A DNA stretch of 64,000 nt from Stylophora pistillata (lineage: Eukaryota). Below, piece by piece: positions 26,401 through 32,400 of this stretch. The stretch spans positions 15,619-79,618 of the forward strand of contig NW_019218098.1 of the NCBI RefSeq assembly GCF_002571385.2. Reading direction: 5' to 3'. Within the stretch, counting starts at the first letter, position 1. Each line of letters opens with the position of its first letter. The translations under genes and the position numbers were made by a program. The notes below the pieces were generated by a model that was given only the letters and a program-made list of their open reading frames with translations, was not told the DNA's origin and made no database searches.

Positions 26401-29400
26401 TCATCTCCAAGCGTGATAATAGATACGGCACTCAGCTCATTTTTGAGCCGTTAAGAGTAACCTCGTTCCGATGCAATGGCCTGTTCCTTTACTTTCCCCG
26501 AAGTAAGGAAAAAGGACATGGGAACGAGGTTGCGTGAAGTGGAGTCTTCCCATTCTCAGAATAATGAAATAAGGAAATGAAGAGACCAGAGTAATATGGA
26601 TGGCAGATGAGGTACAAAAGTCAAAATAAAGGAGGTGAACAGAAGTAAACAGATACCGACAAAATGAAATGGACGTGTGTACAACTAAACGGAAAAGTAT
26701 ATGTGCACGATCCTTCGCAGTAAAGCACTATTTGAGCAATAGTGAAAATCAGACCTGAAAAAAATGTTTTGACAATGTTTTGCGAGTCTGTTTGTTTCTT
26801 AAAACTCAAAACGTTCTGAAACTTGCCCTAAGGAACCTAACCTTGGGAGGAAATATGTCTTACTATGGCACGGATTAATAATGCATAGATGCTTTATCAC
26901 GTGATGCAATTTTCTCCTTTGGAAATGAATCTTAAACAAAAGGACTAATTTTGAGGAAATCATTTCTTTTATAGATGTAATTAATATGACTTTTAATTAA
27001 AATTTAAAATATCGTGCTGTTTGGATTTTATTCGAAAAGAAATTAATTACTCTTTTTCACAGCTTCACAAAGAAATCTAGAAGGTTCAATATAAACACAA
27101 AACTTGTGTACACACCTATGTTGGCAATCTTTCGTATGCAAAACCAGTTTTGAATAAATCGATTTTTTTATAGTAAACATAATTAAGAATTTTGATTGGA
27201 AATGTAAACTTGTTCGAATAATGAACTTTTTTAATAAACTTTTAAGAAAGTCCCTCGCTTACGTCCTCGTGACCCATTGTTCCAAAAATAGCTCTGTTTA
27301 CTGAGCTAATGGTTCACAGGTTGCAAACTTTGCGAACTGTAGCTGAAGGAAGGTGTTGCCAAATAATCACTCCCAAAATGCTAATGAAACCCAGAGAACC
27401 TTTATTAAATTAAGCAAAAACAACGCATTACGCAAAACCTTGTCGATAGTGACGAGTATCGTGTAAAGTTACTAATCCTTTCTTGAGTAAACACGTGAGG
27501 CCGACTGGGAAATCGTTTTTCTAAAAATTAAAAAAAAAAAATTAAAAAAAAATTAAAATTAAAAAAAAAAAATTAAAAAAAAAAATTATTGTAACTGAAC
27601 ATGAACCATCTTTTTACACTTGGGTAAAATCAGGCGCAAGAGGTACTAAACAGCGTTTGGGTAACTGTTTCCTGGCAGAAACTGGCCTTTAATCAGTGAA
27701 CTATCAAAAAGAAAAAGAAAAGAAACAAAAGTAAACTTCTTCACTATATAGCTAGTCGAAACTGTGAGAAATAATTTTGAGAGCAGCTGTGAGAAATAAT
27801 TTTGTTGATTATTTCAAAAAATAAATTATTTCAAAAGTTATTAAATTGATTTATTTAAAATTAAATTATTTAAAAAAATAAGGCCGAGTGAATAATGTTC
27901 TTGTATAATTTAGTTCCATTTGCAGGATAAAAGTCATTTTCAAAATAAGGCTTTGGGTATCGCGGAAATGGCCCATCAGAATCAACCTCAAGACAAGCTC
28001 GTATATAATAACAGTTTTCTTTACAGTAAGGGAGCACTGCAGTGTTTCAAGCCATGACTGTTTTGGTAATTATGGCGAGTAGGGAAAAATTAGGGGACTA
28101 ACTTTGCGGCAGAAGGCGCAAATTTAGCGACCTGCGTTTGGCAGTCACAGAGCAAGGAAAACCGTTCCTGTCATATTATTACGGTCTATCCCTTTACCTC
28201 CAAAGGGTGACAAAGAAAGAATTTCCCTTTCAAATACCGATACAATACCAGGCTGACAAGCAATGAGACTAAAGAAAACTTGATCCGACACCAAATTATC
28301 TGAAGTAACATCAAAGGAATTGTATCGCAAAAGGTAGGAAGAATTACTTAAAGAACTCGGGGAGTAAAAATCAACGATGCAGTAATGTGTTACATGGGAA
28401 TGGTACCAATTAATGAATGGAACCAGGGCTGCAGCATAATATGCAGAGGGGGATCAAGCGAGAGCCTTCATTGCTGAAATAAATTTTAATTGCAAAGAAA
28501 ATTACAAGTACGTCTTTGAAGCAAACGTTTCGGAAGAAACTCTCCTTTGGTCATACTTTTCCATTCCATTCCGATTGGTTTCAAGTTTCAGTAATTTTTT
28601 GAAAAGCTATTCGTTCGTGTAATATCTTATTTCGCAGGCAGCGGTTCGCATTGTGGTAGCTCTTCTTTTATCGCCTTCAACCGCTGGACAATGTTCGCAG
28701 ACGTTTCGTCGTTAGGATCTACAGCAAAATCCATCACGAACGAAATGGGGTCTACGCTATTAATGTTTCCCTCGTATGAGGCGAAAATGATATATTCCGA
28801 TCCGGGTTTGAACTCCATTGGACAGCCATACATGTCTCTGATGGTAAAACTGGAAGATAAACAGGAGAAAGGCTGAAATATGACTATGATAAAAAGCATC
28901 GGACGTCAAATTTATCTGTGACATTCTAGATATAATAGTGGTTTTAGGTACCAATCATTATTTATGGGGGGGGGGGGAAGGGGGTTCGAGGGATTTTGGA
29001 AGGGATTAAATGGTTGTCAAGAAGAACGGAGGAGGGATCAGTTGTTGCTAACAGAGTATAAAAGGGGGGAGTGTAGAAAATTGACTGACAATGGGGGAGG
29101 GGGGGACATAAGAACACCACATAGCCTTGTAGGGGATTCAGGTAAATTTCACTGTGACACAACCTAAATCATCCCATCTTATCCCATCCCACCCCCTCCT
29201 GGCGAAAAATATTGACCGGGCCCTTATGTCCAGTCGCGCTTGAGACTTGTGAAGCAGGTGGCAACTGTAACTGATTTGGCGTTCTTTGTTCCCAACTAAT
29301 CGATTGGAGAGTCCATGCCTTGACGCTTTTAACTTAGAGAAGCCGACAAGAAATTTGCCATCAGCAACAGGATAAGAGGACTCAACTTCAAGGCGAGAGA

Positions 29401-32400
29401 GGAATTTAAAGAGAGTAAATCTTTCTTTAAAGTTTTTAATGTCAGTAACTCACTCGTGCTTTATGGAGATTTCTTCGTCCGGCGAAACAACCATAGGCTC
29501 GTCTTGTCTGAGGATTTCCAATATTTTCACGTTCACCTCCAATATAAACAGGCTCTGGGAAGAAATTACTCTGGCGACTAAGGGGGTAAAAAGAAAAATT
29601 TAAAGATGTGGGCAAGGGTAACTAAGGTTTCCCGTTCCAGATCTTATACAACTGAGTTTTAAAAAAGCACCTGAGCCGCTCGTTTAGAACGTTACACCTG
29701 CTGACAAAAGTTGGTAGGCCAATCTTCTTTACGTGAATTCGTCAACCGGTAAGGTTTGGACCAGTCAGTGGAATGAAGTTTGTTTTCTGGTCAAACGCGA
29801 AATTTCATTTAGTCTCGTCATCTCTTATCGCATCGAACTTCTTCTCACAGTTAGGAGCAGATGTCGCCCACTGGCTGTAACCCATCGACCGTAATTAAAT
29901 AGGTACCCCTCAGAAAAGTTTTACAAATAATGCTTCAAACGCAGACCACGACCAAGAAGGAAGCCAAACGTAATTTCATGAAACAACAACAACAACACAA
30001 TATCGATTAGTGTACATACCAAGATTGCTGCCACACATCATTTCATCCAGATTGTCCTCTGTTTCATCTATGAAATATTAAGATCATTGTTTGAATTACG
30101 AGGACAAAACTGGCCGAGGCTGAATTAGAACCTGCCATTTCCCAGCTCCTTAGCAGCCGTTGCGTTTGGAGCTCGCCATGCATCACGCTTCTTCTTAGAC
30201 AGTGGAGGAAGGAGCGTGGGGCGAGCGCTAATAGGAAGAAGCAAAGTCAACCTTGAAATATCATTCTCCTGATTGGTCCCCAGTCGTCTTCAAACAACTT
30301 CATAGAGCGCACGGCACGGGGCGAGGTGGGAACGCAGGGTGAGATGGGTAGGGAGAAAGCGAGAGAGGAAAACTTCTCTTCCCCTTCCCATTATCCCTTG
30401 CTCCCTTGCCATGTGTGGTATGAAGACAACTAGGGACGAGTCGGAGCATTCCCTTAATCCTTTGCGGACACGTGGTGTGTCCTCTTGGAACGACATCGTT
30501 TTGATATGGTTGTGCTTCGGGCTTTGCAATAAGCTATTACTGTTTCCGGTTTTGAATACCTCGGTCTGTAGTCCTGATGTTGACTTGGAAACCGGAAGCT
30601 ACTCTATTGGGAGGAATACCAGAGTTCAGAACAATCTGCATACAAGTGGAATTACAATGAGACACAAAGGAGCCAGGAGACACCTTGGAACCACAGTATG
30701 TCCTCCATGGAAATTGCTGCCGATCACATTCTGGGGGCAAAAATATTGAATATATCTTAGAGCCCATTCAAACTTTGACGGATTCATTTAAAATTCAACT
30801 TTGTTCCTTGAGAGAAGTCAGGTGTCCACACTGAATTTGGTAAATCGTCCGGCGAAAACAGTGCTTCTCGAAAACTCTCTTGAAACATATGTATGAACTG
30901 CGGTTATGAACCGTATATGTGCACGATCCTTCGCAGTAAAGCACAAGAAAAGAAGAAGAAAAGAAAAGTGAGATACTACATACATACATACATACATACA
31001 TACATACATACGTACATACATACATACATACATACATTTATTTGGTAAAGCAGGTTAAGTTAATACAATCGCAGCAAAAAGCTGATGCGGACTGCCTTTG
31101 TTTTTTAACTCAGTGAGTTTAATATGAGTGGAAATAAAGCACAAATGAATGCCATGAAAGGATAATGTGTTGAGTATGTTATATCCTGCCAGACCATCCG
31201 AGTGATCAGGCGCATCCATTATCGATCTTTAAAAGCGTTTAGCTTTGAGAACTCCTACAAGCCGCCGCCAACCTGTCTGTCGTCATTATGCACTTGTGTG
31301 ACAACATGCCACTTAATGCAAAATTCATATATCAACAGTAACCCCCAAAAATGAATTGCTCTTAACTTATACTCTCAATTATGCATGCATTAGCACGCGT
31401 GCCCGTTAACCGTCGAAGGTGTGCTTTTCATGGATAGTCATTGTTAATTTCTTATTGTTCTCGATTTGGCTTTAAACCTAGTCATGACCTCAAGGGCTTT
31501 CAGTTGGCGTCGAAGGTTGTCTCACTGTGAGTTGCTTCTGTTATCCTGAGACATTTTGTTTCTGTTTGTTAGGCCGTTTTTTAACTCTCTGTCCCTCACT
31601 TGCACAATAAGGCTAATCGTAAAACCTATCTTTTGAAAATGAGTTTTATTAGCATGATAGAGATATTTTTTCTCATTAAAGTCTTTGTGTTTTAAATACT
31701 CTTTTTTTAAGCAGAGGTTTCAGGCTTCCCTGAAATTGCCTTTTGACTTATGAGTGTAAAATTCTTAATTGAAGGTTCTGTTTCCTGGGAAACGCACGCC
31801 ATTCGGACATTTTTCATAAAGACATGTACCACTCTATAATTCGGTATGATTTTCAAGGTATGTACGAGAATCGATCTGACCCGGGTTTGCTTGCAGTTAA
31901 AAATTGTGCTATAAGGAATAAGGCGCGATTCAGCTAAAAGTGGTGGCTTTAAATTGCCGTGATAACTCACAAATTGCCTCTGATTACCATAGATATGATA
32001 TTTTAATGTTAAATAGGGCTAAGTCACACGATCGTCTTTTCCTTCCCGGTAAAAATTTGAATAAAGGAAAGAATAACATTTTAGTAGGATCTTGTAAACA
32101 ACTTTTGAATCCTGAACCCAAAATACGTCAGAATTCTCGATAAAAGCAAGCATCGAAATAATTGTTTGATGACACGAAAACGAAATCATAAATATTTACA
32201 TCCCAACTTCAGATGCACTTTATAACAGAGAACTTGGCAGGCTTTCATCTAAAGGGCGCCATAAATCTGAACATTGCATGATAGATGCACCATCGAGAGA
32301 ATACTTTTTTGTCATAAAAAATATAAATATAAGGTCGTCTTTGTAGGAGGCTCCATACCTGTTAAATTACGTTTTAAGTGAGAAAATTTAAATTTAAATA

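What the first reader, a model, noticed from the sequence alone, without database searches (positions are those of the whole stretch)
26697..30944. Circularly permuted 4.2-kb duplication bounded by 32-bp direct repeats: signature of a circular intermediate or RT template jump
Seen: the donor reads A(40223-40254)-B(40255-40286)-C(...44443); the copy in tubulin intron 2 reads B-C-A-B. C is joined to A through a TGAAA microhomology (30881-30885), and identical 32-bp B repeats sit at both ends. A and B are the tail of the tRNA-core repeat family. C differs at only ~8 positions in 4.1 kb, whereas A+B differ at ~4 of 64. Inference, two models: (1) excision and circularisation of A-B-C followed by reintegration or rolling copy (eccDNA-type duplication); (2) reverse transcription primed at the repeat tail, reading into unspliced pre-mRNA and jumping to a second repeat RNA. 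Either way this abundant repeat appears able to mobilise adjacent genic DNA.
Basis: partly seen in the sequence, partly recalled or inferred. Interest (0 to 1): 0.8.

Follow-up and report, generated by a model that had tools for sequence, protein, structure and literature searches.

The report
Repeat-anchored gene-fragment copy in tubulin intron
A 4.2-kb piece of a neighbouring gene region appears a second time inside a coral alpha-tubulin intron, joined at every border through copies of a very abundant tRNA-bearing retroelement. Three other colonies show no extra copy, so it is either a rare template-switch event or an assembly error, and it is not good evidence for a DNA circle.

Summary
The pattern is in the assembly exactly as described. 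26697-30897 equals 40255-44455 (4201 nt, 11 mismatches, no gaps), and the copy reads B-C-A-B with identical 32-nt B ends.

The interpretation changes. The repeat is a 247-bp tRNA-Thr-like retroelement that inserts with 9-13-bp target duplications, tandem units and an inverted arm, in the manner of Penelope-like elements. The scan has reported this family before on other DNA of this genome.

- **Borders.** The first base of B and the first base of A are the family's two recurrent internal start sites, 32 nt apart. Both "odd" joints of the copy are therefore ordinary element ends.
- **Origin of A+B.** The copy's A+B belong to another subfamily than the donor's. This argues against a circle made from donor A-B-C.
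- **Other colonies.** In contigs of three other colonies, the tubulin flank already abuts B. C has single-copy depth, and every copy-specific letter is an allele of the donor locus.
- **RNA.** The copy keeps three introns and 1.75 kb beyond the poly(A) region.

Verdict: a patch anchored on a pre-existing B stub. Reads of the sequenced colony would decide.

The parts
26697..26728 (-). Left B (unit positions 1-32, subfamily-2 letter T at 26704). Its first base is the family's main internal start site. It abuts the tubulin-intron flank.
   Evidence: The joint of flank and B is present in contigs of three other colonies, which run 26300 to 26721-26723 with no mismatch.
26729..26765 (-). Unit positions 33-69, ending in the A7 run (the T7 run on the tRNA strand). 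This stretch is still repeat, not unique C.
   Evidence: the unit matches 26697-26765 at 68/69.
26766..30880 (-). Copy of unique donor DNA. It holds the donor element's right target duplication (26769-26780), 1.75 kb of intergenic DNA, and the last four exons with three introns of a CUB/Ig-domain gene.
   Evidence: Splice joints 28849/29454, 29577/30020 and 30067/30560 are seen in RNA reads.
28515..30731 (-). Exons inside the copy: 30560-30731, 30020-30067, 29454-29577 and about 28515-28849 (last exon; stop at 28627-28629). All three introns are kept, with GT..AG ends on the minus strand.
   Evidence: Upstream exons of the same gene at the donor carry CUB and Ig domains.
30881..30912 (-). A (unit positions 216-247) of subfamily 2. 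Its first base is the family's second start site. TGAAA is shared with the donor sequence at 44439-44443.
30913..30944 (-). Right B, identical to the left B. It ends at unit position 32 against an A/G-rich intron sequence followed by (ATAC)n.
   Evidence: A break at position 32 next to unique DNA is found nowhere else among exact matches in the genome.
40204..40323 (-). Donor element E2: a 120-nt 5'-truncated copy (unit 197-247 plus 1-69, 100 % to consensus), 14 nt upstream of a rhodopsin-type receptor gene. It is flanked by the 12-bp target duplication TTGACAATGTTT (40192-40203 and 40327-40338).
40255..44443 (-). Donor segment B-C. In the donor the sequence runs on past 44443 into the intron of the CUB/Ig gene.
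   Evidence: Contigs of three colonies run from the end of C straight into this donor flank.
25900..32700 (-). Alpha-tubulin intron that holds the copy. It lies between the exon ending near 32445 and the exon starting near 26085.

Best explanation
The insert is a patch built on a pre-existing stub of the retroelement, not a permuted circle.

The tubulin intron already carried a piece of the element that begins at unit position 1 (B). I infer the following steps. A DNA 3' end finishing in that B was extended on the homologous B of the donor element E2, 13.5 kb away. That template was either chromosomal DNA or its rare read-through RNA. Synthesis ran through the rest of E2 and 4.1 kb of its upstream flank. 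It then continued on a second element copy from that element's own start site (unit position 216), through A and B. Finally it was resolved by B pairing back to the stub. This would leave flank-B-C-A-B-flank with identical B ends and no new target duplication.

What is shown: every border is an ordinary element end, A+B come from another subfamily, the direction is donor to copy, and B is present at this site in other colonies. What is inferred: the order of steps and the polymerase. My odds within this reading are about even between a Penelope-type reverse transcriptase on RNA and a DNA polymerase in break or fork repair. The event would be rare or private to the sequenced colony.
For: - Left B and right A+B carry subfamily-2 letters, while the donor has subfamily-1 letters.
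- Flank|B with the T variant is present in contigs of three colonies. Their C contigs have the depth of single-copy flanks or less: X3 10-12.8 against 12.4 and 9.8; X1 63-95 against 149 and 143.
- Unit positions 1 and 216 are recurrent insertion ends. There are 207 pattern hits for position 1. Six independent cases start at position 216, one of them inside a 13-bp target duplication.
- There is no target duplication around the 4.2-kb insert, only GAAAA.
- The donor element's target duplication is complete only at the donor.
- The joint 'tubulin flank, 69 nt of repeat, unique C' is shorter than the 96-mers of the published assembler (PMC5730576). It should therefore need real reads. This last point is inference.
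- There are no gaps and no spare haplotype contigs.
Against: - No read set of the sequenced colony was examined, so the extra copy is unverified.
- Three of three other colonies lack it by depth.
- The copy has no private change. All seven of its letters are alleles seen at the donor locus, which an uncollapsed haplotype would also give.
- With DNA as template, landing exactly on position 216 needs either an unseen element insertion at 44443 on the template haplotype or a chance of roughly 1 in 200.
- With RNA as template, one needs a 4.2-kb transcript that keeps three introns and reads 1.75 kb past the poly(A) region. RNA depth there is 0-2, against 30-77 on exons.
Confidence: 0.45

Rival explanations
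1. Assembly artefact. The 'copy' is the second haplotype of the donor segment. That haplotype carries a polymorphic element insertion at 44443, starting at unit position 216. Scaffolding and gap filling threaded it into the element insertion of the tubulin intron through the shared repeat, so no second copy exists in the colony.
For: - Both borders lie in a repeat with roughly 28,000 units by read depth.
- Copy and donor differ by 0.2 %, no more than alleles do. All seven copy letters occur at the donor locus in other colonies, in contigs that run on into the donor flank.
- C is at single-copy depth in three colonies.
- The two copies are 13.5 kb apart in the same orientation.
- The published pipeline for this species used read normalisation, ALLPATHS-LG with HAPLOIDIFY, then SSPACE and GapFiller for three rounds (PMC5730576).
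- False duplications from haplotypes are common in short-read assemblies (PMC9516828).
Against: - The flank|69-nt|C joint and the C|A joint (5-nt overlap) cannot arise in a 96-mer graph without reads. Closing gaps between repeat-ended contigs would be expected to leave at least one full unit (inference).
- There is no N in the whole 64-kb window.
- No spare contig holds the other end of the supposed insertion.
- There is no other direct duplicate of 300 nt or more in 227 kb of the same scaffold.
- It needs an unseen insertion at 44443.
Confidence: 0.4
2. Target-primed reverse transcription started in the element tail of a read-through pre-mRNA, copied C, jumped to a second element RNA, and inserted the whole B-C-A-B block into an empty site.
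For: - The left end and the C/A joint are the family's two start sites. This matches the two internal initiation sites and the 30-40-nt 'tail' of Penelope-like elements (PMC11167929).
- Penelope elements have copied intron-bearing host genes framed by their repeats (PMC3846280).
- The family is transcribed on both strands.
Against: - Flank|B exists in colonies without an extra C.
- The left B has the subfamily-2 letter, not the donor's.
- There is no 9-13-bp target duplication, unlike ten checked insertions of the family.
- Read-through and intron RNA are almost absent.
Confidence: 0.07
3. Circular DNA intermediate. One version is the reader's model 1: circularisation of donor A-B-C at TGAAA. 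The other is a circle popped out by recombination between two direct element copies flanking C. In both, the circle is then integrated by recombination in B.
For: The copy is exactly one turn plus 32 nt, with identical B ends. Recombination between a circle's B and a resident B stub would give this product.
Against: - A+B in the copy are not the donor's (4/64 differences, other subfamily), which excludes the simple version.
- The recombination version needs an unseen second element at 44443, plus two rare recombination steps on 32-130 nt of homology.
- No circle-specific read evidence was obtainable.
Confidence: 0.08

Closest known systems
Host genes framed by Penelope pseudo-LTRs in the rotifer Adineta vaga (PMC3846280)
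   Same: A host segment with all its introns lies between direct repeats of a retroelement, in a genome where the element inserts as partial tandems with an inverted piece.
   Different: The rotifer case has an 8-bp target duplication, an inverted repeat and a proven empty allele. Here there is no target duplication and no inverted piece. The repeat is only 32 nt, and the 'empty' allele seems to hold B already.
Two internal start sites of reverse transcription and the 30-40-bp 'tail' of Penelope-like elements (PMC11167929)
   Same: Insertions of this family end at two fixed places 32 nt apart (unit positions 216 and 1), besides a ragged 3' end at 193-203.
   Different: No enzyme or autonomous partner was tied to the family here. 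No hammerhead ribozyme was found.
False (heterotype) duplications in genome assemblies (PMC9516828)
   Same: A near-identical nearby copy that differs only at allelic sites, bounded by repeats, in a short-read assembly of a heterozygous animal.
   Different: Such errors usually sit beside gaps. Here there is no gap, and the joints are shorter than the assembler's word length.
Templated insertions by synthesis-dependent strand annealing or microhomology-mediated break-induced replication between dispersed repeats (own knowledge of the repair literature)
   Same: Invasion through short repeat homology, copying of flanking unique DNA, exit by micro- or short homology, donor unchanged, no target duplication.
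   Different: The exit point falls exactly on an element start site, which repair alone does not predict.
LINE-1 transduction and chimeric retrocopies made by template switching (own knowledge)
   Same: Flanking DNA is co-copied with an element, and the reverse transcriptase switches to a second RNA.
   Different: There is no poly(A) and no target duplication, the introns are kept, and the flank lies on the 5' side of the element.

Membership tests
Penelope-type non-autonomous tandem retroelement (the repeat family itself) | Target-site duplication of variable length around the whole insertion | tested here: met
   Duplications of 9-13 bp in L002b, L008, L009, L011, L012, L014, L019, L021 and L028, and around the donor element E2.
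Penelope-type non-autonomous tandem retroelement (the repeat family itself) | Tandem units plus an adjacent inverted, truncated arm | tested here: met
   Arrays of the form [+ arm][- arm] at most loci, always with the same polarity and with variable centres.
Penelope-type non-autonomous tandem retroelement (the repeat family itself) | Two fixed ends 30-40 nt apart (the 'tail') | tested here: met
   Ends at unit positions 1 and 216, 32 nt apart. For comparison see PMC11167929.
Penelope-type non-autonomous tandem retroelement (the repeat family itself) | Hammerhead ribozyme in the repeat | tested here: not met
   Rfam finds only a tRNA-like match (48.9 bits) in the unit and nothing in the window.
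Host segment captured between Penelope repeats by retrotransposition | Direct element repeats on both sides of the host segment | tested here: met
   Identical 32-nt B at 26697-26728 and 30913-30944.
Host segment captured between Penelope repeats by retrotransposition | Target duplication around the composite | tested here: not met
   Only GAAAA is shared by the two 20-nt flanks.
Host segment captured between Penelope repeats by retrotransposition | Empty allele without any element sequence | tested here: not met
   Three colonies with single-copy C still have flank|B. The rest of their allele could not be read.
False haplotype duplication | Single-copy read depth over the duplicated stretch in the colony that was assembled | not testable with these tools
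   None of the runs laid matches the assembly at all sites. X3 carries letters found in neither copy.
False haplotype duplication | Differences between the copies are allelic variants of one locus | tested here: met
   All seven copy letters are seen in donor-linked or single-copy contigs of X1, X3 or X5. At 30544 in X3 both letters sit at 4.7 and 4.8, and their sum equals the flank depth.
Circle excised from the donor and reinserted | The junction parts (A and B) derive from the donor copy | tested here: not met
   60/64 to the donor, against 63/64 to arrays of another subfamily.

The most novel reading that the evidence does not exclude
A Penelope-type reverse transcriptase used a nicked genomic 3' end that happened to finish in 32 nt of element sequence as a homology-anchored primer. 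It extended that end on a read-through pre-mRNA carrying the same element, and re-initiated at the element's internal start site on a second RNA. The new flap was then fixed by pairing back through B. This would be a natural reaction of the prime-editing type that writes 4 kb of intron-bearing host sequence into another gene.
Probability: 0.15. Interest if true: 0.75.

Novelty: new member of a known kind. Interest (0 to 1): 0.35.

Why it matters
If the copy is real, it is a dated, nearly mutation-free example of a very active coral retroelement family seeding the copying of four exons into the intron of a highly expressed gene. The borders show where synthesis started and switched. That would extend the one earlier report of intron-bearing host genes moved by Penelope machinery, and it would offer a compact system for studying how such enzymes choose start sites.

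If the copy is an artefact, it warns that near-identical duplicates bounded by this repeat in the reference assembly, and the gene models built on them, should not be trusted. This includes a supposed tubulin chimera.

Either way, the circle reading should not be carried forward.

Tried and rejected
- **Helitron or rolling-circle DNA transposon.** Considered for the tandem and inverted arrays. Rejected because insertions have 9-13-bp target duplications.
- **Known self-cleaving ribozyme at the A|B border.** None found in Rfam at E up to 1.
- **Unit position 32 as a regular 5' end ('unit + 32' form).** Rejected. Only 17 pattern hits, all but this locus being point variants.
- **Look-ups of open frames that cross the joints or lie near the end of C in public contigs.** Nothing on record.
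- **Exact scans of metagenome contigs for the C/A joint and the B/right-flank joint.** No match. The species may simply be absent from that collection.
- **Search for spare haplotype contigs of the tubulin flanks or the donor's right flank.** None found.
- **Whole-scaffold self-comparison.** The 227 kb held show no other such duplicate.
- It could not show either. The stretch 30942-31048 was skipped as repeat, and only the longest contigs were listed.
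Full report
**Observation.**
A self-comparison of the window shows 26697-30897 aligned to 40255-44455 over 4201 nt, with 11 mismatches and no gaps. It also shows 30881-30944 aligned to 40223-40286 at 60/64, and 26697-26728 identical to 30913-30944. Reading the joints confirms B-C-A-B in the tubulin intron, A-B-C at the donor, and TGAAA shared at the C/A joint. Seven differences lie inside C. 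One lies in the left B, at 26704. Both B copies of the insert have T there, where the donor has A. The window has no N.

**What the repeat is.**
The donor's A-B matches many places in the genome at 100 %, spaced 247 bp apart. One array has 12.2 identical units. Each unit holds a tRNA-Thr(AGU)-like sequence (48.9 bits) on the strand opposite to the window's plus strand, followed by a T7 run. No ribozyme family matches.

I numbered the unit from the first base of B. With that numbering, B is 1-32, A is 216-247, and the A7 run ends at 69. In 33 fetched loci the insertions show three features:
- They carry 9-13-bp target duplications. Ten cases were checked, including the donor element.
- They usually consist of a plus arm followed by a minus arm.
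- They end at fixed places. One end is ragged, at 193-203. One is exactly at position 1, with 207 pattern hits genome-wide, 42 of them in one variant array. A minor one is exactly at position 216, with six independent cases, one inside a 13-bp duplication.

This is the geometry described for Penelope-like elements: cleavage and extension of both strands, two internal initiation sites, and a 30-40-bp tail (PMC11167929; PMC3846280). Other agents of this scan reached the same reading of the family on other DNA of this genome. I re-derived the arrays, the inversion and the target duplications myself.

**Anatomy of the two loci.**
- *Donor.* The donor element E2 (40204-40323) is a 120-nt 5'-truncated copy, 100 % to consensus. 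Its own 12-bp target duplication sits at 40192-40203 and 40327-40338. The tubulin copy contains only the right-hand one (26769-26780), so the donor is the source.
- *Content of C.* C holds four exons of a gene whose upstream exons encode CUB and Ig domains. It also holds about 1.75 kb of intergenic DNA reaching E2, which sits 14 nt upstream of a rhodopsin-type receptor gene. RNA reads splice the three introns. They join the first of the four exons to the donor's upstream CUB exon, not to tubulin.
- *Copy.* The copy keeps all three introns.
- *A+B at the right end.* They match arrays of a second subfamily at 63/64.
- *Right border.* The right B stops at unit position 32 against intron DNA. That break is seen nowhere else among exact matches.
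- *Flanks.* The 4.2-kb insert has no target duplication; only GAAAA is shared.

**Other colonies.**
The run labels show a coral. Another agent's note names Stylophora pistillata, which fits the genome size.

I laid contigs of three DNA samples from two studies (X1, X5, X3) and raw RNA reads (X24) on 26300-31300. Four results follow:
- *Left flank.* In all three DNA samples a 1.8-kb contig runs from the left flank into B up to 26721-26723 without mismatch, including the T at 26704. It then stops at words shared with other copies.
- *End of C.* In all three, the contig through the end of C stops matching at 30897 and carries on for 226-236 letters. Its mismatch count fits the donor's letters at 30886, 30890 and 30893. 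It is therefore the donor locus.
- *Depth of C.* Depth equals or falls below that of the unique flanks. X3 gives 10-12.8 against 12.4 and 9.8. X1 gives 63-95 against 149 and 143. X5 gives 60-208 against 169 and 131. Twofold depth is seen nowhere.
- *Alleles.* Each of the seven copy-specific letters appears in one or more of these samples. At 30544 in X3 both letters are present at 4.7 and 4.8, and their sum equals the flank depth.

So these colonies have the B stub in the tubulin intron and no second C. The 'copy' sequence is an ordinary haplotype of the donor locus.

The tool warns that contig depth is no copy number and that contigs drop variants, so I treat this as strong but indirect evidence. 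None of the samples is clearly the sequenced colony: X3 has letters at 26961, 28248, 29537 and 30416 that neither assembly copy has. The C/A joint and the B/right-flank joint could not be inspected.

**Weighing the explanations.**
- *Circle from donor A-B-C.* It fails because A+B and the left B are not the donor's.
- *Single retrotransposition of the whole block.* It fits the two start sites and has a precedent with kept introns (PMC3846280). Against it stand the pre-existing B, the subfamily-2 letter in the left B, the missing target duplication, and the near absence of intron and read-through RNA (0-2 against 30-77 on exons).
- *Two readings remain, and both build on the resident stub.*
  - A real, rare patch: a 3' end in B is extended on E2 and its flank, continued on a second element from position 216, and resolved through B.
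  - An assembly artefact: the second donor haplotype, ending in a polymorphic element at 44443, is threaded into the intron's element.

For the artefact speak the pipeline (read normalisation, ALLPATHS-LG with HAPLOIDIFY, SSPACE and GapFiller three times; PMC5730576), the known frequency of haplotype duplications (PMC9516828), the allelic nature of all differences, and the same-orientation placement 13.5 kb away.

Against it speak several points. The flank|69-nt|C joint and the 5-nt C/A joint cannot come from a 96-mer graph without reads. Gap closure between repeat-ended contigs should leave at least one full unit (my inference). There are no gaps and no spare haplotype contigs. There is no other such duplicate in 227 kb of the scaffold.

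I put the real patch at 0.45, the artefact at 0.40, the single-event reverse-transcription model at 0.07, and circle models at 0.08. Within the real patch I cannot choose between reverse transcriptase and DNA polymerase. Each choice carries one improbable requirement: a rare unspliced read-through RNA for the first, and an unseen element at 44443 or a chance landing on position 216 for the second.

**Novelty and interest.**
The family has already been reported by the scan. Repeat-anchored templated insertion, capture of host DNA between Penelope repeats, and haplotype duplication errors are all known kinds. If real, the case is a clean new member with informative borders. If not, it is a caution for this assembly. 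Interest is moderate to low until the sequenced colony's reads are checked.

Noticed in passing
window 61276-61465: An older copy of the same retroelement family, about 85 % identical to the unit. It covers unit positions 19-217, including the tRNA-like part.
   Followed up: partly
window 26634-26800 and 30809-30975 (read depth): Summed contig depth over B and A is about 28,000 times the single-copy depth in X3 (316,370 against about 11). That is far more units than the assembly lists, so arrays are probably collapsed, and their 100 % identical units may partly be a product of gap filling. RNA reads cover the element on both strands (about 149 and 119).
   Followed up: partly
L028 (G000:C73:112246-112962) and five other loci: Insertions whose second arm ends exactly at unit position 216 rather than at the ragged 193-203 end. 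With position 1 this gives two fixed ends 32 nt apart, as described for the 'tail' of Penelope-like elements.
   Followed up: yes
G000:C8:733626-741761: A long array of a 219-bp variant of the unit (42 hits spaced 219 bp), with T instead of C before unit position 1.
   Followed up: no
window 28515-30731 versus tubulin: RNA reads splice the four exons of C to one another and to the donor's upstream CUB exon (62 reads run on from 30731 into the exon at 45025-45261). No read joins them to tubulin exons, so the chimeric-tubulin idea noted on this stretch by another reader has no RNA support in this run.
   Followed up: partly
L050 (G000:C314:321952-322688): A 737-nt perfect-looking inverted self-match directly beside a 479-N gap. 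It may be an element palindrome or a gap-edge artefact.
   Followed up: no
window 29537, 30416, 26961, 28248: At these places both assembly copies share a letter that differs from the contigs of one to three other colonies. RNA of a further colony is mixed at 29537. These are ordinary polymorphisms, but they show that none of the laid DNA runs is plainly the sequenced colony.
   Followed up: partly
window 33962-38428 and 39228-40190: A short-chain dehydrogenase gene (plus strand) and a single-exon rhodopsin-type receptor gene (minus strand) lie between the copy and the donor. The element E2 sits 14 nt upstream of the receptor's start codon.
   Followed up: partly
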